The notes: generated by a model not told the origin, from the sequence alone. A DNA stretch of 64,000 bases from Iphione sp. A-MEVVRFRX5 (GCA_976226885.1 OZ320316.1:81716001-81780000); one strand, 5' to 3'; counted from the stretch's first letter, positions 1 to 22,900 are shown. Program-made: numbers and translations.

Positions 1-960
1 TATGCCATAGTATACTGCTTACTAAGCTAAGTAACTTCAAACTAGGAGCCTATGAGGTCTGTATTGCTAACTACCTATCCTCCCGATACCAAAAAACGGT
101 TGTGAACAGAGCTGAATCGGCAGAATTAGAAGTGGGCTGTGGAGTACCCCAGGGCTCCATATTAGGCCTGCTTCTATTCATCCTCTACATAAATGATCTG
201 CCATCCTTGATAAAGGGTTGTGAAAGTATACTTTATATGGACCACCTGGTCCTCATAGCACATGGAGATGATCTATCTGAGTGCCACAAGAAACTGCAGA
301 GTGGACTAGATCAGTTGAATGACTGGGCAAGAAATAACAGAATCTAAGTGAGTATACCGAATACAAAGATCATGTGATTCGCATACGTGATTCCAGAACT
401 TAATTGATTGGTGAGATTTATTATGGAGGAACGGAGCTATAACAAGTAAATGTTTTTAACTATCTGGGAGTACTAATAGATAAGAACCTATCCTTTAAGT
501 CACATTTGCAATCACTGACCCGGAAGGGGTATGGAAAACTAAATCAATTCTGGAAGATACGAAAATATATGAAACAGGAGTTAGCATGGAAACTAATCAA
601 GACTATTCTGCTACCTGTCACTAACTATGGCCTGGCTTTTGTAAATACCGACACTAGGAAATATGATAAATATGTGACCCTGCGTCAGCGTATCTATCAT
701 TGTGCACTCCCAAGAAAGCCAGATAGAGAGAAGATCAAAGAAGAAGTACTATCATTGATTGAAACTAGTATCATTAGGATGGGATGTGGCCTGAAAATAC
801 CAAAAGATCTTAGCAACAAACACTCCCCCACACATGAATCAAGAACCAGAGAAGGGCAGCGCAGGCAATTGAAAGTAAGAATCAGACCTCAAAATGAAAA
901 TAAAGGCTATCCGTGACATATAAGTTCAAGAACTACTGGCATCACAGTCTAAGTGTAACA
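1..960 (+). mobile_element. Decayed CR1/L2-group LINE fragment (RT C-terminal half and ORF2 C-terminus), running off the window start
   Basis: ORF 102-347 reads GCGVPQGSILGLLLFILYINDLP...LYMD (RT motifs GVPQGS and a degenerate YADD). ORF 506-916 continues with the post-RT region (LSFKSHLQSL...KLIKTILLP..NYG). Stops and frameshifts lie between them. Confidence 0.9.
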
Positions 961-12000: not shown

Positions 12001-13929
12001 TGCATTAATGAACTACCACTTTATTGCGTACTGGTGCATTAATGCACTATACATGTACTGGAATGTGAAGATAAGGCTTCAAAATGCAGAAATAAATCAA
12101 ACATGTGCCTTTTTTGAACTCAAAGTATTTGAGAATACTCTGCATTAACTAGTTATTAGGAAGTGTATGTTTGGAGGACTAAATATGATTTTAAAGACTC
12201 TCTCAAAACCTGATACAGATAATATGCTCTCATCAAGAGTACGATTGACGATTTACCATTCAGCATTTTTAAATGTGTAGGAGGTTCTATGGCTTTTCAG
12301 TTGATTTCCTTTAGGAATATGGTATGTATTTAATACAGGTATGCGCGACTTTTCTCGAAATTTAAACCATCAAGAACGACAAGGTCCCAGAACGAAAGAT
12401 GATATGTGTCATGCAAAAAACATTGTCATTTCATTGATTTTTGTTTCACGTCACATATCAAATAACTGCCCCTTCGTGCTTTCTGGTGAGCCTTGCACAG
12501 AAGTTTACAAAGTTGTATCTAGCCTTGTTTTTCATCAAACTAAGCACACAAACATTATGGTAAGGGACAATTGTGCATCTCAGGGATAGGATTATCGTAG
12601 CACTCGTAACTGTACACATCAAAATAATTTTAGCCCTGGCTTTTAAGGATTATGATAGTCTAGGTCCACTTACAGAACATTCCATTACCGAATAATTGGA
12701 ACAGTATCAATCCAGTTTAAAATCCAGGTGCACATTATTCTGCCCGTAGTGATAACGATAAATGTTGATTTGATCTCCATTAACATCACTAAGAGGTTAA
12801 GATGACAATATCATATATCAAAATGTATTCCGGCGCCATTTTCGCCGTCGTTTTGGTTTTCTAACAACAAAAATTTGGGGGGGAAACAAAGTAAGGCTTC
12901 GTAAAATGTAATGACTCACAGTTTTGCCTTCCTTTAGTTTTGAAACTGGAGGGTGATAATGAACAACGTGTTGTCTGTACAAAAAAAGTCCTGTTCTTCC
13001 ATTGCGTGATTGGCATGTGTCTCTTCGCTGGAACAGACGAGGCCTTTCACACTGTAGCTGTTGGAACCTGTCTTCAGCTGTAAAAGGTTCTCACATGCGA
13101 TGTCCAAGGTTCTGTGGACGATAAATCAAGAAAAAACTATTGTGATTATTGCCTCATACCAAATGAAGTATCGTAGTCGTATTTCATTGCCTCTTCGAAA
13201 GGTTTGAGTTGCCTTTAGATGTACTCCAGTTTGTAGCCAGTGATCTCCTTTCACTTGTCTACATGACTCACTTCGACCTGATGCTTGATAGTGGGAGTTC
13301 TAGAAGGTGCTACTCAACAGATGCCCACCTATAAATAGACAGCGACCTTTTGAAAAGTACTAATCTAAAGGAACGTATCGTCACTTCAGGCAAACATGTC
13401 ACTATCTGGTTAACTTGGAGCCACAAGATTAACCCAAAAGATTACTTCTTGCTCAAACAGTCATTTTGATCCCTAATACATTTCTTTCAGGAAGCTTACC
13501 TGTCTCTTTTGTGGAGTAGGATCAATTATACGCTGTTACTTTATAATCGTTTTTGATATATGCACACAGGTCTTTGGGGTTTAACATTTTAACAGTTGGA
13601 GTAAATGCCGCATTAAAACTTCTGTCAAACGTCATTCACATCATGAACATAGACCATAGCATTTCGTATCAATAATGCCTTATATATTAGCTGGAACAGC
13701 AATGATAATATGATTGTCCCGTACGTTTCCTTTGTATTTATGCAAGTTATCATGATACTGAAGCCCGAGATGTGCAGTAAAAATAAAGTAATGAACACTC
13801 TGTGGTTAAATATACATTGGCGACATTTTTGGTTTGAAAGTGTTTATTGAGCACACCCGTCACATATTGAATACATGTTATTATTGAGTAGCACTCCATG
13901 TTCACAACAATTCCATACATCTCAGGCAG

Positions 13930-16719
13930 CTACTTTGACAAGATATTGCATTTTAAATAGTTTTTAACAATCGTTCTCTTTTGATTGACTATTCTGCCAG
14001 GCAAGCTATTCCATTTTGATGTTGCTTGGTAGATGAAACTTCTTCTGTATTTTTCACTTTTCGGCTTCGGGATATATAGTTGTACCTCTGTACCAGCTCT
14101 TGTTCTAGTCCGCTTTCTTGTCTGACAAAAAGATAAATTATACATGTCAGTTACTAACATCATTGATAGGTAAAGCATTCTTTTATCTAACCTGAATATT
14201 CTTTTCTTAGTTAACCATTCTTCTATCTCTTTGGTCGATACAAATTTATTTAGCACACTCACCCTTATACCCCGATACCATACCCTATTCAGCTTTTGTA
14301 AATCAGTCGACCTGGCTGATAGAAGTAAACCCAGTCCGAAATCCACATGTGGTTGAACAAATGCCAGAAAGAATTTTCCTCTCAAAGACAGGTTTAACTC
14401 TCGTTTGCACCTACCCAATAGATGACTAACTGTATTTATTCTCTTTAACTTGTCTTCAATAAAGGGCCTAAATGTCAATTTTGAGTCAAGTCTATAGCCT
14501 AAAAATTTGAATTCCTTTACGTTTCCTAGGTCTACACCATCTAACTTTACATCCAACCTAAATCCTTCAGCTCGACCAAAACACATTATTTTAGATTTTT
14601 GTTTATTAAAAACTAAGCCATTAGTCTTACACCAGTCACCAATTCTATTCACAGAGTATTGCAACTTCTGCCTAAGGGCCCATGCACTCGATGCTGAGGC
14701 CACTACTGTTATATCATCAGCGTACACTATCAATTCACATGGCTTTGCTACATCAAAAATATCGTTTATAGCTATGATGAACAATAGTGGCCCCAGCACC
14801 GATCCCTGCGGTACACCAATGGAGACAGGTAGCGGATCGGATATTCTATTGTTGCACTTCACACATTGAGATCTTCCAGTCAAATATGATGTTACCCAAT
14901 TTAGAATACTGTCCCCGAATCCATAGTTTTTCAGTTTACGTATTAATAAGTCATGCTGTATCATATCGAAAGCTTTCGACATATCTAAAAAAGCCCCTGC
15001 TACATATTTCCCCAAATTAATTTGTTCATAGATGTCCCTTAGTAATACCGCACTTGCTAGTCCCGTCCCTCTCTGCCTTCTAAAACCGAACTGGTTTTTG
15101 TTAAATATTTCCTGCTCCTCCATGTATTGATAAAGTTGATCAAAGACAATTTTTTCCAGCAGTTTACTGGGAGCCGGCAGTATAGTGACGGGCCTATAGT
15201 TGCTAGCTTCAGCTCTGTTGCCCTTCTTGTATAATGGAACGACCTCTCCCTTCTTCCAATCCTCGGGAATGACACTACTCCTCAAGGATAGATTAAGCAA
15301 TTCCGTGAAAAAATAACCAGTGCATTTAAGGGCTGCTTGTAATAACCTCATAGAGATACCCCTTATTCCCGATGGCTTATTTAATTTTAACTTGCTAATT
15401 AACTTGAAAACTGCTGAATAATGTACTTCTTCAAATTTTAACAACCCTGTTTGTACATGTTCACCCACATCAGCTATTAATTGTGCCGGTACAGACATTT
15501 TCTTAATTGTCTCCACAAATACGGTGTTCATTATATTTGGTACCTCCGAACTATCCACTATCGTACCCTGATACTTTATCGTTAATTCTTGTCCACTAGT
15601 TTGAGTCTTCCCAAATGCTAATTGGTTAATAAAACCCCACAATTTACGATCATTTCCCTCAAATTGTTCAAATTTTGCTCTAATTAATTCTCTACGCTCT
15701 GTTTTGATTAAACTATTAGTAGTATTGCGATAAAAGGCCCAAATTCTTTTGTAATCCACATTGCCAGTTGTTATCCACTTTTTCCGATAATAATCACGTT
15801 CTTTCTTAACCTGATAGATTTTATCACTACCACCACCCCTACGTAATATAGGGCCCTCCCGTTGTACCCAGGGACACAAGCTATCTAACACTTTTGTGAC
15901 ATTACTGACCCATAGTCCCCAACACTCATCCACTGTCATCTTCTTGTCCCAACTCCAATCACATTCATCCAGTTTCTCTTTTAGTTTATAAAACGAATAG
16001 TTGGTCATGTCTCTTGCCAAATAACTTTTTACCCTCTTCCTATGGGACTGCTTCTTATAATTCACATAGATTAGTAGGTGGTCGCTGCTTCCTTGATATA
16101 TCACCCCCCCACTATGATACTCAGTCGGTGAAACATATAGATGATCGAGACATGCTAATTTATCATGGGTTGACTGATTTATTATTTGAGTTAACCCTAA
16201 ATCCATAGAGAAATCCTTACAATGCCTTTGGTCCTTATTTCTTTTTAACCAGTTTACATTAAAATCTCCAAATATAGTCACGTTCATTTTGCCAAACTTG
16301 TTTATTATTTTTACATTATTTTTAATATCACTCAGCAAAAGTTCAAGATTCCCATTTGGGGGTCTGTAAATCAGGTAAACTATATGCATTTTTCGATTCC
16401 CAGGTTTTATTTTGACACAGATCACCTCCCCGTGTTGATCCATTCTACACCCTTCACTGATAGTCTCAGAGTAGAAGTCGTCTCTTACATACATCAAGAC
16501 ACCTCCTCCACGCTTCTTACCAATTCTTACATAGTCTCTGTCCAACCTATGACATCTAAAACCCCCCATTCCTACCATATCATCCGGGAAAATATCCGAT
16601 AACCATGTCTCACAAATCCCCATGACATCTATTCCCTTACATTTTAAAATACCCGAAATTTCATCCAGCTTGCCTAACATGCTCCTGCAATTCCACATCG
16701 CCATTCGAAAATACTTCAT
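13930..16719 (-). CDS. LINE ORF2: apurinic-type endonuclease + reverse transcriptase (929 aa from first ATG), no C-terminal zinc knuckle
   Basis: EN motifs: WNCRS, GICETWL, YRPP, GDFN, LDHLY, SDH. RT motifs: NYRPVTILPAPSKLLEK, QFGFR, FLDMSKAFD, GVPQGSVLGPLLF, YADD, FLG. The C-terminus YIPKPKSEKYRRSFIYQATSKWNSLP is typical of the CR1/L2 group. The track start at 16725 is a TTG; the first ATG is at 16719. Confidence 0.97.
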   Translation of the reverse strand: MKYFRMAMWNCRSMLGKLDEISGILKCKGIDVMGICETWLSDIFPDDMVGMGGFRCHRLDRDYVRIGKKRGGGVLMYVRDDFYSETISEGCRMDQHGEVICVKIKPGNRKMHIVYLIYRPPNGNLELLLSDIKNNVKIINKFGKMNVTIFGDFNVNWLKRNKDQRHCKDFSMDLGLTQIINQSTHDKLACLDHLYVSPTEYHSGGVIYQGSSDHLLIYVNYKKQSHRKRVKSYLARDMTNYSFYKLKEKLDECDWSWDKKMTVDECWGLWVSNVTKVLDSLCPWVQREGPILRRGGGSDKIYQVKKERDYYRKKWITTGNVDYKRIWAFYRNTTNSLIKTERRELIRAKFEQFEGNDRKLWGFINQLAFGKTQTSGQELTIKYQGTIVDSSEVPNIMNTVFVETIKKMSVPAQLIADVGEHVQTGLLKFEEVHYSAVFKLISKLKLNKPSGIRGISMRLLQAALKCTGYFFTELLNLSLRSSVIPEDWKKGEVVPLYKKGNRAEASNYRPVTILPAPSKLLEKIVFDQLYQYMEEQEIFNKNQFGFRRQRGTGLASAVLLRDIYEQINLGKYVAGAFLDMSKAFDMIQHDLLIRKLKNYGFGDSILNWVTSYLTGRSQCVKCNNRISDPLPVSIGVPQGSVLGPLLFIIAINDIFDVAKPCELIVYADDITVVASASSAWALRQKLQYSVNRIGDWCKTNGLVFNKQKSKIMCFGRAEGFRLDVKLDGVDLGNVKEFKFLGYRLDSKLTFRPFIEDKLKRINTVSHLLGRCKRELNLSLRGKFFLAFVQPHVDFGLGLLLSARSTDLQKLNRVWYRGIRVSVLNKFVSTKEIEEWLTKKRIFRLDKRMLYLSMMLVTDMYNLSFCQTRKRTRTRAGTEVQLYIPKPKSEKYRRSFIYQATSKWNSLPGRIVNQKRTIVKNYLKCNILSK

Positions 16720-16877
16720 AGTCAATTTTGTATTTAGTAAAACGACAGTATGAAACGGGGGGCTCCAAGAAAAAACAGATAAACTAAATTCTTTTAATTA
16801 AGAATAACACACCTTACCTATTCAACACCACACCTATTCAACATAGAATCCGTGAACAATAATGGGAATAATACTTA

Positions 16878-17516
16878 CTACAACTGGCCAAACATGATTG
16901 CTATAGCAGATTCAATGCTATGCGCCCAGTCCCTCAGTACCCAGCCATCAGGGTGACATCCATCGTATAGATGCTGATACCTGCATCTAAAACGTTTCCC
17001 ACACCAACTATGCACTGGGAGTGCTGTTGTCGGAGTGTAGATGTTGCTCTGAATATTCAGATCTCTGAAAACATCATTAACAATAACAACCGTATCTGTT
17101 AACAGGCTTTGAAAACTATTCGATGCGGTTTCAGGACTGTACTGAAATAGATTAATACCACTAATAGGCATATACCCAAAGCGCATCTCCGAACCTCGAT
17201 TTCTTATGCGTGCTTTAAGCTCGGAGTGAAATGCTCGTAGCCATAAAGACCACATATTCGGATCATCATGAATAATAGTTAGTTGCTTAGTCACAGGGTC
17301 CCGCTTACAGAGATTATTTATCCCAAGAAATAGGTACAATAAATCATACATGATGACATTTAAGTTGTCCACATTATTCAGAACCCAGTCTAATTTTGCA
17401 CCCGGTTGAAATACCACATCTATATATATATCACGCTGTTGAAACCAATAGTGATCAATATATTGACTTAACATTCTACCCCGGGAATCTGATACAATCA
17501 GTACTCTATAGACCAT
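16878..17516 (-). CDS. Stand-alone SGNH/GDSL-type hydrolase (esterase), 212 aa, middle ORF of the LINE
   Basis: Block I LIVSDSRG (nucleophile Ser), block II PGAK, block III LFLGINN and block V YDGCHP (DxxH). True ATG at 17516; separated from ORF1 and ORF2 by non-coding spacers. Confidence 0.88.
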   Translation of the reverse strand: MVYRVLIVSDSRGRMLSQYIDHYWFQQRDIYIDVVFQPGAKLDWVLNNVDNLNVIMYDLLYLFLGINNLCKRDPVTKQLTIIHDDPNMWSLWLRAFHSELKARIRNRGSEMRFGYMPISGINLFQYSPETASNSFQSLLTDTVVIVNDVFRDLNIQSNIYTPTTALPVHSWCGKRFRCRYQHLYDGCHPDGWVLRDWAHSIESAIAIMFGQL

Positions 17517-17886
17517 TGTCTACACTTTTCAGTTTATATTCCAGTCTTCTACTTTTAACAATATCCCGTGTGGGCAGACAGTTGCCCTACACTATATCCG
17601 GTCGTGCCAGGTTTTCAGACGTATACAACTCCACCTCCAGTCATGGACACGTGTAGTCTGTTTAAACATAATACAGAAAGATAAGCAGCGATCCTATTAA
17701 TAATAACATAACATCTATTTGCGACAGTAACAAAATCACCGCTCCATTACTCAAGGCAATGAGACACTATAGCCAAACATCTTAATATTTCCAGGTGACT
17801 CAACATATGGTCTAATACTAATGTAATAATGATAATACATAGTCCTCCTTGTCACCGTCAGCGTATATCCCTGTATGTAAGTCCAT

Positions 17887-18007
17887 GGGTAGACACTTAC
17901 TCCATGGGATATGTACTATAAATATAGATTACAACTCGGGTAGACACTTACCGCAGAGCAGTAGAATATAATACAAAAAGATTCACTCTCGGGTAGACAC
18001 TTACCGC
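17887..18007 (-). repeat. Three ~52-bp diverged units with conserved core GTAAGTGTCTACCC (sense of the LINE)
   Basis: gggtagacacttac at 17887, 17938 and ~17991 on the + strand; the intervening sequences share tataa...agatt.ca.ctc. Confidence 0.85.
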
Positions 18008-18105
18008 TGAGGGAATAACCAGAATATCCTTATCAGTCACCTAGCACGACACCCACCAATCGGCCCGTCAGAAAATTCCTGTAAAGAGAACAATATTACA
18101 GAGAA

Positions 18106-19851
18106 TTAGATAAAGCCACGAATCATTTCCAACATCCGACCATACTCATTCTCTCCTGGATAGTCTGTGCTGTCTAGTGTTTTGTCCCAGTAGGCCTTAC
18201 CAGCGCCCCACCACTTATCTTTCGAAGCAAGTATCAGGGACATATCCCCAGTACCTTTGAGTGCCGCTGCTGCTAACTTGTTTTGCTGGAATTTCGCAGT
18301 CAGTCCCACACGAAGTGTCATGCGAGATAACTGGTCCCAGTCCTTGGTAGGTTTACACGTGTTTCCTAATGTTCTTGCTCTTCGTGGATTCTCCTCCAAT
18401 AAAATTCGATGTCGAAGACCCTCGTCCCCACACACTCTCGCTCGTTCAGCTTGAAAATGGTGTTCCGTGGTCTCAAATCGTTCGCCCCTGACCACAAATG
18501 GTGTCCGGGAGAAACTAGAGAGCTGCGTGTGCTCTTCTCGAATTACCACTGCAGACTGCACTTCTTTACAGCACGCCTTGTCAATATTCAAATTTTCCGG
18601 CAAACAGTCCAGCCTATCATACGAATACTCGACCCCGTCGACTCGCAGATTCAGACCACGCACCATGGCCTTGCTACCCTGCCCCCTTGCCAGGTCCGCA
18701 ATCATATGCAGATTTCGGTGCCGGTCCTTCAGACTTTCCGGGATGTCCTCTTTTAGAAACACCCTCTTCAGTGCCTCGATCTTACGTAACTGGCTTCGGC
18801 GTGAAAACAGGCTGTTCCTAGCTTCTATGCAGGAAAATCGAACCAGAATAGGTCGTGGTCTATTCATAGGCCTGCCCAGTCTTGTTGCCGACAGTATCGC
18901 ATCCGGACCCAAGTTCGAGTCAATTTTGCAGAATATACCACTGATCAAGTCCCATGTTGTCATCGATTCCTCCTCTTTCAAGTTTTCAACAATTAAGTTT
19001 TGCCTTCTTGCATCAATTTCCATCGTTTCCACTTTGTGCTTCAGACTGTCATTTTCCTGTTCTAACACATGCACCCTTGAATTCAGAATTTGACCAACAC
19101 CCGTTAGATCTTTTATTTTTGCAGTTACATCGGATTTCCATGCCTTATCAGCTGTCATCATTTTGTTTAATGATTCGACTAGGGTTTCAGTTTTCGTCCC
19201 AATCAGAGTCACCTTCTTATCCAATGACCCTAGCTTCTGACCAAGGTCAGAGCTGGTTTCAAGGCTCGTCTGCACAGATTTTAATGAATTCTTTATCTCC
19301 ATCTGAGCACGAAAAACACATATCAACGCTTCCCGAATATCCATATTAACTATATCTTCCTCAGTAATCTCGTTAGAGGGGTCAGTATTCGGCAATGGTA
19401 CTTCGGGGTCTGGTAATGTCGACTCAGATGGCCCTACTGGCATAACAGGAGACATTGGGATAGAGGTGCTGATATTTAATAACACAGAGTCAGTATTGTC
19501 CAACATACCTGTATCAATTTGGTCATCAGGCACCTCAGTTGCCCTCGGGGGAAGTGGCGATATCCCTGAACGCTGCCCCTCAGTAAGTGCATGCACCAGC
19601 GCAGACATTACTTGGATCGCCTCTTGTCCTATGGGACTGGTGCTATTAATAGTACCGTCCACCGCTCCTTTTCCACCCGCACCCGGCTGAGGTAACTCAA
19701 CGTCGACGTTGTGGGCTTCATTTCTTGTTTCTCCTCCATTTTCCGGTATTTGACTATTCAATGAGTTCCCTTTTCCAGGTAAAGACGACTTGTCAGACCT
19801 GGTTGTCATTTGGTGCGTCGGTTGCGTTGGTTGACGGCCTTTAAATGGCAT
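18106..19851 (-). CDS. LINE ORF1: low-complexity N-terminus + coiled coil + L1/Transposase_22-type RRM-CTD + C-terminal NADAR (YbiA-like) domain (~581 aa from ATG 19851)
   Basis: Heptad region LKSVQTSLE...VLEQENDSLKHKVETMEIDARRQNLIVENLKE. RRM signature RLG...RPRPILVRF...RNSLF, then VFLKED and a CTD (LRVDGVEY). NADAR at 18106-18537: LSSF..TPFVVRGERFETTEHHFQAER, ARTLG, DW, AKFQQN, LKGTG, DKWWGAG, GENEYGRMLEMIR. The track start at 19977 probably lies outside the element. Confidence 0.9.
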   Translation of the reverse strand: MPFKGRQPTQPTHQMTTRSDKSSLPGKGNSLNSQIPENGGETRNEAHNVDVELPQPGAGGKGAVDGTINSTSPIGQEAIQVMSALVHALTEGQRSGISPLPPRATEVPDDQIDTGMLDNTDSVLLNISTSIPMSPVMPVGPSESTLPDPEVPLPNTDPSNEITEEDIVNMDIREALICVFRAQMEIKNSLKSVQTSLETSSDLGQKLGSLDKKVTLIGTKTETLVESLNKMMTADKAWKSDVTAKIKDLTGVGQILNSRVHVLEQENDSLKHKVETMEIDARRQNLIVENLKEEESMTTWDLISGIFCKIDSNLGPDAILSATRLGRPMNRPRPILVRFSCIEARNSLFSRRSQLRKIEALKRVFLKEDIPESLKDRHRNLHMIADLARGQGSKAMVRGLNLRVDGVEYSYDRLDCLPENLNIDKACCKEVQSAVVIREEHTQLSSFSRTPFVVRGERFETTEHHFQAERARVCGDEGLRHRILLEENPRRARTLGNTCKPTKDWDQLSRMTLRVGLTAKFQQNKLAAAALKGTGDMSLILASKDKWWGAGKAYWDKTLDSTDYPGENEYGRMLEMIRGFI

Positions 19852-19898
19852 TTTCCTTTGATTTTTCTTGGAGCCACCGAGTTCACGTCTACTCACTA

Positions 19899-19917
19899 GC
19901 CGCCATCTTATGCAAAT
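19899..19917 (-). promoter_or_regulatory. Candidate internal promoter/start of the LINE: YY1-like AAGATGGCGGC abutting an octamer ATTTGCAT
   Basis: The sense strand reads aaATTTGCATAAGATGGCGGCtag ~50 nt upstream of the ORF1 ATG. YY1 sites at the 5' end are established for L1 internal promoters; function here is inferred. Confidence 0.45.
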
Positions 19918-22900
19918 TTCACATGACATGAAGATATGATTTGTGAAGACACAGTGACAGCAGGATTTTAAATTCATCTATATATAAAAAAAAATATACG
20001 TACTATTCATTTTGCTGCAAGTACCATCTTGCGTTTTTAAAAGACGTTTCATCAGCAAATACTGCAGGATTAATTCTTCTTGAGAAACGCTCCCCACTAG
20101 ACTTCTTTTGATGAATTTGGATAAGTATCATCATTTTTTAAAAATTCAGGACAGCTGTTTACAACATGAGGGTCAGCCAACCCTGTTGAGTATGTAAACC
20201 AGTATTCTTCAGTTAAAGCTTTCTAACACTATGAGTGGTATTATATGCTGGTGGAGTTCGTGTAGGGAATATGCATAAAATATTACATAAAGGATATATA
20301 CAATGAATGATGAATAGTTACTGAGATCCAGTTTCACAAACATCCGGTTATATATATGAATAGCTGCCCCATCATAGCAGCCCCATCATGACACACATTT
20401 TTGAGTTGGACTTAATTGCTGGATGATACACTTGCCCATACATTACAAAAGGCCCAACATGCAAACTGCTAGCCAAATGGACTGGTTTGGACTCGGAGAT
20501 GCGGGCAGCGACTTTTCTTTGACAGAAACGTGTCTGTACGGTTGACCCGTCTCTCGAGAACAGCCGCCTCCACGATGCATTGACTCGGAGGGTGAGGTCA
20601 CCGTCCCGCTCAACCCGCCGAACACCACCCTCGGACCTCATGCAATTTTCTCGGTGGGGAAAATACGAGCAGGGGAAACAATGGTGGCGCCTCGGCGACC
20701 ACGGGTGCCCTTATTGCCAATTAATTCCGCCAAAGTGTGGCACAGCAAGTGAAGATGCCTTAGACAGCAGTTCCCTCTATCAGAGCGACCTGACAACATC
20801 AGAACCCTGGCTGTGCCAATGAGATCGATATTCTTCTATATAGTGTGCCACAATCGAGCAGCCATAGGTACAGAGGCCATATTCCAAACTCTATGTAGAT
20901 AACAAGGTATTCATTCTCGTAGCAGTAGCTGTGAGAAATAGTTTGCCTACTTGAAGAGACACGACAAAAGAAGATCAGTGCAGTGTACTTGAAGGAAATA
21001 CGCGTACCACTGTTGAGTCATTGCTTTCAGTACAGGTTGTCTGATTCTATTGTACCGTGCGGCCGATGTCCATTAGGGTGAGTTCCCACACAACGAGAAT
21101 TCAAGAGACGTAAGGAAAATAGCCCAGGTGCAAAATGAAGTGGTAAATATACTTCTCATTCTGCTGTAGATGCAGCAATGTACTTCGTCGTGTTTGCCAC
21201 GAGAAGTGCTCAGACGATTCCCTATGTGTCACAATGCGTGAATATTCGAAAGGAATTCTTCATTATATGAAAGGAGCCCCGTCTTTATGTAGCAGCGAAA
21301 GGCAGAGTCTGATCTGCCGAGCTGTTCTGAGTTCTCTGGTCAGCAGGATTAGGAGCAGCTCGGGAGGCGCAGACACAGGAAATTGGTGGGCCTATCCACC
21401 CGACACGTCGTGGTTCACCGGGTGAAGGTAAAAGACGATAGGGACATGCAGACCGGCCTTTCACAAGCCCCCAAGGGAGGCAGCAGAGAGCGACTGGTGA
21501 TGACAACATGGCCGAGCGGCCTGTCACAGCAAACCTGTCATTATCTGCATGGAGTTGACGGATTCTTTGCGCAAATGACGCTTGTCGTTCCGTGTGCGAC
21601 GGCCAACAGTCGGGCACAATGAAACCTGGCATGAAAGGAAATAGAAATCTCGACACGAGGACAGGATGCCGAAAAACCCATGCTCGAGACGCGAATGATG
21701 CAAAAACTGCATGGGAGAGAGAGTGATCCTGTTAAAACAAGTACAACTATCTCCTCCAGCTCTTTTAATCCTTAAATCCTCTTCGCCACTCTCTGCCTCT
21801 CATCGATTAAAACGGAAAGTAGATTATAATCGTGATGCGTCAACTGCCTGAGACCTAGACGCCATTAGAGTTCATAGCCCCCTATCCATACAGCAGCACT
21901 TCAAAGATACAGGATGGACGATGTTATCTGTATCGGGTATCTCTCCATCGCTCTCCATGGAAGCAGTGATGGACTTTGGGGTCATTCCACAGCAGACCAA
22001 GTTGCCTAGACCAGCCCAAATTGAACCGTGGACGTGGAGCTGCTCCTGAGATTAACTCATCTGGCTAAAGCCTGATAGTTGGTTGTATTATATTCGCTTG
22101 ATTTTGTCCTAACGATAGATTACACTTTGTGTTAGTTCAGGTCATCTGACACAAATGCATTATAATGGTCACATTTGTTCAAAACTTAATGAACGTGCAG
22201 CTTTGTTTCCCATTATCCCGATCACTGTATTTAGAAATGTCTTTTTTGTTCATCTTACTTTTTATAGGCCTAGATTGCAAAGTGTGACTATAGATTATTT
22301 GACCTTGTTTTAAATGAGAGCATGTCGGTACATGCTTCTGGAAGCATCAAAAAATCTTTTCTTGCCCCCATTGTTTCTCTCTGTTTCCATTAAGCAGTCG
22401 ATACAGGGCGAGTATTGTACGACACAGTCGCGTCCTTTGGCTGTCTCTTGCGCCGACATATACACCTCTATTGGCTTTGAATCAGGGCGGGCCTACTGCT
22501 ACTGCCGTATTTTTGTCAGGCAGGAAAAAGCCTCGGATGTTTAGAGCGATCAACCTATAGGAAGTAAGGAAATAAGCTGCGTTGTAAAGGCTCTTCGATT
22601 CGACTGAATGTCGTCTTCACTTGATTCCCCTTCCATCGGTTCTTTGTAACGTGAACATAGGCAGAGTCTGCAGGAAGATAATTAAATCATTCAAATTATC
22701 CTAATCCTATCATCGACATAGATCCTTTGTCAATGTTAGCAAGGTTTATGTTTGGATAAATGTTTCATTGAAGCAATCACTTGCTGAATCGATATAAGAT
22801 CATATTACGCGGTCCCTGTTGTATAAAGTGCAAATTTAAATATGCATATGAACCCATCCATTTTCGACGTAAGGCTATAAAAGAGCAAGTAAATTACATG

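What the first reader, a model, noticed from the sequence alone, without database searches (positions are those of the whole stretch)
13826..19912. Intact tricistronic LINE: RNA-chaperone-NADAR fusion + free SGNH hydrolase + APE-RT
Seen: three stop-free, co-oriented ORFs (about 581, 212 and 929 aa) separated by ~590 and ~160 nt spacers, with all EN and RT catalytic motifs intact, which suggests a young and possibly active element. Established: CR1/L2-group LINEs normally have two ORFs, and accessory enzymes such as esterases are usually domains within ORF1p. Inference: this element carries two accessory enzymes that could act on host modifications (ADP-ribose/N-glycosidic bonds and acyl/lipid esters). 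That would be a cargo-bearing, possibly counter-defence LINE architecture that I do not recognise as described.
Basis: partly seen in the sequence, partly recalled or inferred. Interest (0 to 1): 0.9.

Follow-up and report, generated by a model that had tools for sequence, protein, structure and literature searches.

The report
Three-gene LINE with NADAR and esterase
This is an intact jumping gene (LINE retrotransposon) that encodes three proteins instead of the usual two: an RNA-packaging protein fused to a NADAR domain, a separate small SGNH esterase, and the endonuclease-reverse transcriptase. The same gene order recurs in distantly related LINEs, so it is a real and old design that I could not find described in the literature.

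Summary
On the minus strand lie three intact ORFs. ORF1 is 623 aa, or 581 aa from the second ATG, and ends in a NADAR domain. ORF2 is 212 aa and has an SGNH fold. ORF3 is a 929 aa APE-RT. The spacers are 589 and 158 nt.

This is not a one-off chimera. The order NADAR-ORF1, then a ~210 aa SGNH ORF, then APE-RT recurs in at least four other loci from two public assemblies. Their proteins are only 20-41% identical to these, and their RTs form one clade with this element.

Two corrections apply. The hallmark catalytic glutamate of YbiA-type NADARs is a leucine in this copy, though six relatives keep it, so NADAR hydrolase activity here is doubtful. A 2025 paper already notes NADAR on LINE ORF1 proteins, in oyster Repbase entries.

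I found no description of the three-ORF layout, which puts an RRM-type ORF1 and an esterase in one element. Element ends, copy number and expression could not be tested.

The scan has flagged the same architecture many times elsewhere in this genome. My verdict is a new variant of a known kind, of moderate to high interest.

The parts
13826..19977 (-). Minimum extent of the LINE, from the first ORF1 ATG to the A5 run after the AATAAA. The true 5' end is unknown; a weak candidate lies at 20394.
   Evidence: ORFs. Negative GC skew runs continuously over 14000-20000. The candidate 9-nt TSD CAAAAATGT at 20395-20403 and 13823-13831 arises in 28% of shuffles, so the ends are not established.
18106..19977 (-). 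ORF1, 623 aa (581 aa from the ATG at 19851). It has an acidic, probably disordered N-terminus, a coiled coil, an L1-like RRM/CTD and a C-terminal NADAR domain.
18568..19332 (-). Coiled coil (about 19018-19332) and an RRM/CTD-like RNA-binding module (about 18568-19017) of ORF1p. The boundaries are approximate.
   Evidence: The ORF1 profile hits coiled-coil chains (E 1e-4) and human L1 ORF1p 2ykp/2yko weakly (E 0.2) over the coiled coil plus RRM. Atlas features match Transposase_22 and Baculo_FP_2nd clusters at 0.84-0.93. My HMM of this part finds ORF1s of 8 related LINEs. Pfam PF02994 itself gave no hit.
18118..18537 (-). NADAR domain of the YbiA family, ORF1p residues 481-620.
   Evidence: Pfam PF08719 E 1.7e-23. 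TIGR02464 scores 82.6 bits against a cut-off of 73.7. E. coli YbiA 2b3w E 3e-9. The profile hits 8bau at E 7e-20.
18229..18231 (-). Codon CTT for Leu583, at the position of the YbiA-family catalytic Glu (E125 of YbiA and of P. nicotianae NADAR).
   Evidence: Six relatives have Glu here. CTT differs from GAA or GAG at all three bases.
17517..18105 (-). ORF1-ORF2 spacer of 589 nt. It holds three copies of a ~52-nt tandem repeat (17867-18011) and 10 ATGs.
   Evidence: (D1). In relatives this junction is a TAATG overlap (L004), a 26-nt overlap (L003) or 112 nt (L005).
16878..17516 (-). ORF2, 212 aa. A stand-alone SGNH/GDSL-fold hydrolase with Ser11, Gly39, Asn67, Asp185 and His188.
16720..16877 (-). 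ORF2-ORF3 spacer of 158 nt, with one ATG.
13930..16719 (-). ORF3, 929 aa. APE endonuclease (about 16078-16695) and reverse transcriptase (about 14488-15228), with a C-terminal ...RRSFIYQATSKWNSLP motif.
13826..13929 (-). 3' UTR of about 104 nt. It has an AATAAA at 13843-13848 and ends in A5 (13826-13830).
   Evidence: Read. The end is not confirmed by other copies.
16751..16777 (-). One arm of a 27-nt, 81% complementary inverted repeat. The other arm is at 19859-19885. The arms lie just upstream of the ORF3 ATG and of the ORF1 ATG at 19851.
   Evidence: I1. No counterpart in L003, L004 or L005, so its significance is doubtful.

Best explanation
This is a full-length, uninterrupted copy of a non-LTR (LINE) retrotransposon. 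It belongs to a clade whose ancestral gene set is three ORFs on one RNA.

(1) ORF1p is an L1-type coiled-coil/RRM RNA-packaging protein with a YbiA-family NADAR domain fused to its C-terminus.
(2) ORF2p is a free ~210 aa SGNH esterase. It is homologous to the esterase that other CR1/L2-like LINEs carry as their ORF1.
(3) ORF3p is the APE endonuclease plus reverse transcriptase, which copies the RNA into the genome by target-primed reverse transcription.

Shown: the domains, their order, and the recurrence of that order in anciently diverged relatives. Inferred: the functions below.

The esterase most likely does what the ZfL2-1 esterase is thought to do, which is lipid or membrane association of the ribonucleoprotein. 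The NADAR domain most likely binds or removes ADP-ribose-type adducts on the element's RNA or cDNA, or processes an N-glycosidic bond. In this copy the catalytic Glu is Leu, so here it probably binds rather than hydrolyses, or it uses an altered mechanism.

In relatives the downstream ORFs are probably translated by termination-reinitiation, because the stop and start codons overlap as TAATG. In this copy a 589-nt spacer with 10 ATGs makes ORF2 translation uncertain.
For: Domains.

The same three-gene order is intact in L003 (771, 211 and 953 aa) and L005 (677, 210 and 957 aa). It occurs twice in L004. It also occurs at the P0062 locus of a second assembly.

My SGNH HMM finds each of these ORFs at E 1e-53 to 1e-65.

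Protein identities to the window are only 26-30% for RT, 21-28% for SGNH and 19-26% for ORF1. The catalytic Ser, Gly, Asn, Asp and His are kept.

RT tree: a 12-row clade with the window as sister to the other 11 has SH-aLRT 98. With other sampling, the tree that holds this clade together is 23.5 log-likelihood units better than the free quick search found, p-AU 0.84.

Every clade member with a readable 5' part has a NADAR-ORF1. None of 80 more distant metagenomic LINE loci has one. Among those, two carry an esterase ORF1 and eight an RRM-type ORF1.

The ZfL2-1 esterase is catalytically active and binds lipids (PMC3905857). NADARs erase guanine and cytosine ADP-ribosylation on DNA and RNA (PMC11543638, PMC12945103).
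Against: No sibling copy of this element was available, so the element ends, a TSD, copy number, dN/dS and transcription are all untested.

The window's RT sits on a long branch, and one tree left its position unresolved.

Leu583 replaces the catalytic Glu.

The 589-nt ORF1-ORF2 spacer, with a tandem repeat and 10 ATGs, differs from the tight junctions of relatives.

Two clade members, L001 and L006, lack the SGNH ORF, so it is dispensable for some lineages.

The host organisms of the related assemblies are unknown and could be the same or a close species.
Confidence: 0.8

Rival explanations
1. One-off chimera or nested insertion. An ORF1-NADAR fragment of one element happens to lie next to an SGNH gene and an unrelated APE-RT LINE.
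For: The ORF1-ORF2 spacer is long (589 nt) and contains a tandem repeat, unlike relatives. No TSD could be shown. Some SGNH homologues sit with an RT but no called ORF1 (P0058 locus), or alone (P0059 locus).
Against: The identical order recurs in at least five other loci with very diverged sequences. LINEs are typically truncated at the 5' end, not the 3' end (established knowledge of LINE biology), so an ORF1-only fragment is unlikely. The strand composition bias is continuous across all three ORFs.
Confidence: 0.04
2. Counter-defence cargo. The NADAR removes ADP-ribose that host DNA- or RNA-base ADP-ribosyltransferases place on LINE RNA or cDNA. The esterase removes another host modification. 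Both would serve to escape host restriction.
For: NADARs hydrolyse guanine and cytosine ADP-ribose on ssDNA and RNA, and phages carry them as counter-defence (PMC11543638, PMC11825919, PMC12945103). CARP-1-type guanine ADP-ribosyltransferases are mainly found in bivalves and other invertebrates (PMC12945103). The NADAR fusion is conserved over a deep LINE clade, with catalytic residues kept in six of seven ORF1s.
Against: This copy lacks the catalytic Glu. No host transferase was looked for or found here. The host taxon is unknown. The LINE esterase has a published, non-defence rationale of lipid binding (PMC3905857). There is no experimental link between ADP-ribosylation and LINE restriction.
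Confidence: 0.2
3. The copy is intact by sequence but functionally dead or crippled. NADAR is inactivated (Glu to Leu) and ORF2 is uncoupled from ORF1 by an expanded spacer. The intact ORFs would then simply reflect a recent insertion.
For: Leu583. A 589-nt spacer with 10 ATGs against TAATG or overlapping junctions in relatives. No run holding this sequence could be listed.
Against: Some 1,760 codons are free of stops. The Leu codon differs from Glu codons at three bases while the rest of the NADAR stays conserved. That points to long-term retention of a Glu-less domain in this lineage, not recent decay. Human L1 ORF2 is translated without coupling signals (established knowledge).
Confidence: 0.3
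4. The NADAR domain serves RNA metabolism of the element rather than conflict. Examples are processing an RNA end or an NAD-derived cap, or simply nucleotide or ADP-ribose binding that recruits ORF1p. The authors of the only published mention suggested RNA processing.
For: PMC12477816 proposes RNA processing for the NADAR domains of Ectocarpus Gypsy elements and oyster LINEs. The C. elegans NADAR protein SNA-3 is implicated in trans-splicing (PMC11125620). A Glu-less but otherwise conserved domain fits a binding role.
Against: No direct evidence exists. The YbiA-type catalytic residues are conserved in most relatives, which argues for chemistry and not only binding.
Confidence: 0.3

Closest known systems
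Type IV (esterase) ORF1p of CR1, L2 and RTEX LINEs, e.g. zebrafish ZfL2-1 (PDB 4C1B; PMC3905857; Kapitonov and Jurka 2003)
   Same: An SGNH-fold esterase with an intact catalytic set, encoded upstream of the APE-RT of a LINE. There is profile-level homology: hhalign probability 86%, E 5e-6, to the esterase ORF1 of related locus L016, and a weak hit to 4c1b at E 0.05.
   Different: Here the esterase is a bare ~210 aa domain with no coiled coil or zinc-finger/leucine-zipper extension. It is the second ORF, not the first. It coexists with an RRM-type ORF1p. Schneider et al. found no esterase ORF1p in Repbase that also contained an RRM.
Type II (L1-like coiled coil-RRM-CTD, Transposase_22) ORF1p of L1, CR1 and L2 LINEs (PMC4120745)
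   Same: Coiled coil followed by an RRM/CTD-like module with the NL.I.GL.E and PRPI.V.F motifs. Weak similarity to human L1 ORF1p and to Atlas Transposase_22 clusters.
   Different: It carries a ~150 aa NADAR domain at its C-terminus. There is no Pfam PF02994 hit.
Repbase ORF1 proteins of Crassostrea gigas 'Tx1' LINEs with a YbiA-family NADAR domain, and Ectocarpus Gypsy Pol-NADAR (PMC12477816)
   Same: A NADAR domain of the YbiA family fused to a retrotransposon protein. For the oyster elements, it is fused to LINE ORF1p.
   Different: That paper gives two sentences, calls the elements Tx1 and does not mention a separate SGNH ORF. The RT here is no closer to L1 ORF2p than to R2 and has no C-terminal zinc knuckle, so it does not look like L1/Tx1. 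I could not inspect the Repbase entries.
Bdelloid rotifer Vesta LTR retrotransposons and Athena Penelope-like elements with a GDSL esterase as an extra ORF3 (PMC5408684)
   Same: A stand-alone GDSL/SGNH ORF carried as an additional gene by a retroelement, with catalytic residues intact.
   Different: A different retroelement class (LTR and PLE). The ORF lies downstream of pol. There is no NADAR.
DarG1, YbiA and phage NADAR hydrolases (PMC11543638, PMC11125620, PMC11825919)
   Same: The same fold and family. The first Glu, the basic residue and the D..WG motif are conserved.
   Different: Those are free-standing bacterial or phage enzymes. Here the domain is fused to a eukaryotic LINE ORF1p, and in this copy it lacks the last-strand catalytic Glu.

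Membership tests
APE-type non-LTR retrotransposon (LINE) | APE endonuclease and reverse transcriptase in one ORF, with catalytic motifs present | tested here: met
   Pfam Exo_endo_phos E 8.7e-8 and RVT_1 E 4.7e-39. The motifs WNCRS, CETW, GDFN, SDH and YADD are read in the translation. 57 full-length APE-RT homologues.
APE-type non-LTR retrotransposon (LINE) | Target-site duplication and a defined 3' tail shared by copies | tested here: inconclusive
   The only candidate is a 9-nt direct repeat that arises in 28% of shuffles. No sibling copy was obtainable.
CR1/L2 group (Jockey superfamily) of LINEs | RT groups with reference CR1/L2 elements in a phylogeny | not testable with these tools
   No curated reference LINE sequences were available. 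Indirect support: the nearest metagenomic relatives carry esterase or PHD+RRM ORF1 types, which are described only for CR1/L2 and RTEX (PMC4120745). L1 ORF2p and R2 match the RT core only, at E 1e-10 to 1e-12. No RNase H or zinc knuckle is found.
NADAR superfamily, YbiA family | Sequence match above curated thresholds | tested here: met
   PF08719 scores 84.1 bits against a cut-off of 35.1. TIGR02464 scores 82.6 against 73.7. YbiA 2b3w E 3e-9.
NADAR superfamily, YbiA family | Conserved catalytic Glu in the last beta-strand (E125), the residue that defines the YbiA family | tested here: not met
   The window has Leu583 (SLILASKD), aligned to YbiA V-E125-H. L001, L003, L004a, L004b, L005 and L006 have Glu.
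NADAR superfamily, YbiA family | First catalytic Glu (E43 equivalent), phosphate-binding Lys/Arg (K50 equivalent) and the D..W motif | tested here: met
   TEHHFQAER and DKWWG are present. Residue roles are taken from PMC11543638.
SGNH/GDSL hydrolase superfamily | SGNH fold | tested here: met
   The AlphaFold model has pLDDT 95.3 and pTM 0.90. Foldseek against the PDB returns SGNH esterases at probability 1.0 and TM 0.6-0.69.
SGNH/GDSL hydrolase superfamily | Catalytic Ser (block I), Gly (II), Asn (III) and Asp-x-x-His (V) | tested here: met
   S11 is invariant. G39, G65, D185 and H188 are at least 90% conserved in the 61-sequence alignment. The GINN motif supplies Asn67. ORF2 itself has no Pfam hit, but 24 of the 61 aligned relatives hit Lipase_GDSL_2.
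Type IV esterase ORF1p of LINEs | Esterase joined to an N-terminal multimerisation module and encoded as the first ORF | tested here: not met
   ORF2 starts directly at beta-strand 1 and is the second ORF. Most of its 128 homologues are 200-230 aa.
Type II (L1-like) ORF1p | Coiled coil + RRM + CTD recognisable as Transposase_22 | tested here: inconclusive
   No PF02994 hit. The profile hits 2ykp/2yko only at E 0.2. Atlas similarity to Transposase_22 clusters is 0.84-0.88.

The most novel reading that the evidence does not exclude
A whole clade of animal LINEs carries its own eraser of nucleic-acid base ADP-ribosylation, the NADAR domain on the RNA-coating ORF1p, together with a separate esterase. 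This would be a counter-measure to host DNA- and RNA-base ADP-ribosyltransferases of the CARP-1/pierisin type. It would imply that base ADP-ribosylation is a previously unrecognised host restriction mechanism against retrotransposons in invertebrates. The Glu-less variant in this window would then be a derived binder or decoy form.
Probability: 0.15. Interest if true: 0.85.

Novelty: new variant of a known kind. Interest (0 to 1): 0.6.

Why it matters
LINE ORF1 proteins have been sorted into a few types, and the esterase type was reported never to occur together with an RRM. This clade shows that one element can carry both, as two separate proteins, and can add a third activity, NADAR. NADAR's only well-established biochemistry is erasing ADP-ribose from guanine or cytosine in DNA and RNA.

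This gives a concrete, testable handle on two open questions. What is the LINE esterase for? Do animals use nucleic-acid ADP-ribosylation against retroelements? It also matters for annotation. These ~210 aa SGNH ORFs and NADAR proteins in invertebrate gene sets are likely transposon genes, not host genes.

Tried and rejected
- Word-indexed homology searches with ORF2 and ORF1 found nothing. The exhaustive HMMER search was needed to find homologues.
- Folding ORF2 from its single sequence failed, at pLDDT 31.
- An exact-protein look-up of ORF2 found no other copy.
- No sequencing run could be listed. Read laying was therefore not used, and expression and copy depth remain untested.
- No second copy of the element lies in the window, only an unrelated RT fragment at 6-383.
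- The candidate TSD was rejected as not significant.
- The leader-to-ORF3-leader inverted repeat has no counterpart in relatives.
- The SGNH alignment was too diverged for a collection scan. The RT alignment scan gave 80 LINE loci, none with NADAR.
- A 74-row tree timed out.
- An L1/Tx1 assignment was rejected, because L1 ORF2p matches only the RT core and no better than R2 does.
- The chimera or nested-insertion reading was rejected because the gene order recurs in relatives.
- Rfam found nothing in the window.
- Literature searches for NADAR+SGNH, DUF1768+non-LTR and three-ORF esterase LINEs found no description.

Full report
OBSERVATION

The element lies on the minus strand. The ORF listing gives three co-oriented ORFs.
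- ORF1: 18106-19977, 623 aa from the first ATG.
- ORF2: 16878-17516, 212 aa.
- ORF3: 13930-16725, 931 aa from a TTG, or 929 aa from the ATG at 16719.

The spacers are 589 and 158 nt. Apart from an antisense ORF, these are the only long ORFs in the 64 kb window. A negative GC skew runs without a break over 14000-20000.

Pfam finds NADAR at ORF1 residues 481-620 (E 1.7e-23), and Exo_endo_phos and RVT_1 in ORF3. NCBIfam's YbiA-type model also passes its cut-off. The EN and RT catalytic motifs can be read intact in the translation.

ORF2 IS AN SGNH HYDROLASE

ORF2 has no Pfam or NCBIfam hit, and a word-indexed search found nothing. An exhaustive HMMER search found 128 homologues, nearly all 200-230 aa. 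In a 61-sequence alignment, D10, S11, G120, Q136, Y180 and G186 are invariant. G39, G65, D185 and H188 are nearly so. Of the 61 members, 24 hit Lipase_GDSL_2.

With this alignment AlphaFold gives pLDDT 95.3; the single-sequence attempt failed. Foldseek then returns SGNH/GDSL esterases at probability 1.0 and TM 0.6-0.69. The protein starts directly at the first beta-strand, so it is a bare catalytic domain.

NOT A ONE-OFF

No sibling copy of this element could be fetched, but diverged relatives could.

Loci with the same three-gene order:
- L003 carries a 771 aa NADAR-ORF1, a 211 aa SGNH ORF and a 953 aa APE-RT, all intact.
- L005 carries 677, 210 and 957 aa ORFs, all intact.
- L004 carries the set twice, one copy with a broken RT.
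- The P0062 locus, in a second assembly, has a split NADAR-ORF1, a 207 aa SGNH ORF and an RT.
- P0058, the closest SGNH homologue at 35% identity, lies 352 nt upstream of a 944 aa APE-RT.

Pfam confirms NADAR in all the relatives' ORF1s. My SGNH HMM finds the middle ORFs at E 1e-53 to 1e-65.

Identities to the window are only 26-30% for RT, 21-28% for SGNH and 19-26% for ORF1. The L003-L004 pair is the closest in all three proteins, which fits joint inheritance.

PHYLOGENY

In a 60-row RT tree the window is sister (SH-aLRT 98) to an 11-row clade (99). That clade holds L003, L004, L005 (= P0007), L001 and L006 (= P0003). A second tree with metagenomic LINEs left the window unresolved. However, the tree that holds the 12 together is 23.5 log-likelihood units better than the free quick search found, with p-AU 0.84.

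Two clade members, L001 and L006, have a NADAR-ORF1 but no SGNH ORF or remnant of one. Of 80 more distant LINE loci from metagenomes, none has NADAR. Two have an esterase-type ORF1 (L016, L034), and eight have an RRM-type ORF1, one of them with a PHD finger.

I read this as follows. The NADAR fusion is a shared derived trait of the clade. The three-ORF state lies on both sides of its deepest split, so it is probably ancestral, with the SGNH ORF lost in some lineages. This is an inference, and it depends on the window's long branch being placed correctly.

ORF1p

Upstream of NADAR the relatives share the motifs NL.I.GL.E and PRPI.V.F. The ORF1 profile hits coiled-coil proteins, and it hits human L1 ORF1p weakly (E 0.2) over the coiled coil plus RRM. 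Atlas features point to Transposase_22 and Baculo_FP_2nd clusters. I therefore read ORF1p as an L1-like (type II) RNA-packaging protein, with modest support.

THE NADAR CAVEAT

According to PMC11543638 and PMC11125620, the YbiA family is defined by a Glu in the last strand (E125). Mutating the equivalent residue abolishes guanine de-ADP-ribosylation.

In the window this position is Leu583, within SLILASKD. It aligns to E125 of E. coli YbiA. All six relatives have Glu there. The codon CTT differs from GAA and GAG at all three bases. The first Glu (TEHHFQ), the Lys/Arg position and the D..WG motif are retained.

This copy's NADAR is therefore conserved as a domain but probably not a canonical hydrolase. 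I checked it only for this copy.

TRANSLATION

In L004 the ORF1 stop and the SGNH start overlap as TAATG. In L003 the ORFs overlap by 26 nt, and in L005 the gap is 112 nt. This suggests termination-reinitiation, as is known for some LINEs (my own knowledge).

The window instead has a 589-nt spacer with a three-copy, ~52-nt tandem repeat and 10 ATGs. Whether ORF2 is translated here is open.

ELEMENT ENDS

The 3' UTR has an AATAAA at 13843-13848 and an A5 run ending at 13826. A 9-nt direct repeat (20395-20403 and 13823-13831) would give a 6.56 kb element, but such a match arises in 28% of shuffles. The ends are not established.

COMPARISON WITH WHAT IS KNOWN

Esterase ORF1s in CR1, L2 and RTEX LINEs are classic (Kapitonov and Jurka 2003; PMC3905857; PMC4120745). 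Schneider et al. state that no esterase ORF1p in Repbase contains an RRM, and they wondered whether the two are redundant or mutually exclusive. This clade carries both, as separate proteins.

PMC12477816 mentions NADAR on LINE ORF1p in two sentences, for Crassostrea gigas 'Tx1' families in Repbase. The RT here does not look like L1/Tx1.

Stand-alone GDSL ORFs are known in rotifer LTR retrotransposons and Penelope-like elements (PMC5408684).

Searches for the three-ORF combination found nothing. The library searched excludes Repbase and much of the subscription literature.

MECHANISM AND NOVELTY

Most likely this is a LINE clade with three gene products: an RNA chaperone with NADAR, a lipid- or membrane-directed esterase, and the APE-RT.

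The counter-defence idea is attractive. NADARs erase guanine and cytosine ADP-ribose on DNA and RNA, and CARP-1-type writers are concentrated in bivalves (PMC12945103). It is untested, and the Leu583 substitution weakens it for this copy.

The scan's notes show that the same architecture has been flagged many times elsewhere in this genome. I treat those notes as leads for copy number, not as evidence.

This is a new variant of a known kind.

Noticed in passing
window 16751-16777 and 19859-19885: A 27-nt, 81% complementary inverted repeat, with a perfectly complementary core of about 14 nt (GGCTCCAAGAAAAA). One arm lies just upstream of the ORF1 ATG at 19851 and the other just upstream of the ORF3 ATG. 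No counterpart in L003, L004 or L005, so it may be chance or lineage-specific.
   Followed up: partly
window 17867-18011: Three tandem copies of a ~52-nt unit (core GGGTAGACACTTACCGC on the plus strand) inside the ORF1-ORF2 spacer. They probably account for part of the spacer's expansion relative to relatives.
   Followed up: partly
window 20360-20387: Two tandem copies of a 14-nt unit (ATAGCAGCCCCATC), about 400 nt upstream of ORF1. They sit next to the weak candidate 5' end of the element.
   Followed up: no
window 6-383 (+): A fragment of another LINE reverse transcriptase, 36% identical to ORF3 residues 591-717. It is cut by the start of the window.
   Followed up: no
ESM Atlas neighbours of ORF1p residues 215-470: Structural neighbours of the L1-ORF1p-like module include a molluscan cluster in which it seems joined to an Impact_N domain, and an annelid cluster with NADAR. 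This hints that invertebrate LINE ORF1 proteins have picked up several different enzyme-like domains.
   Followed up: no
L004 1-3731 (-): A second, inverted and decayed copy of a different NADAR-SGNH-RT element lies head to head with the first. Its SGNH has lost the block III Asn (GACD).
   Followed up: partly
L030 1077-2204 (+): A metagenomic LINE relative whose RRM-type ORF1 also carries a PHD finger, the type IIC layout of Metcalfe and Casane. This gives indirect support for a CR1/L2-group affiliation of these RTs.
   Followed up: partly
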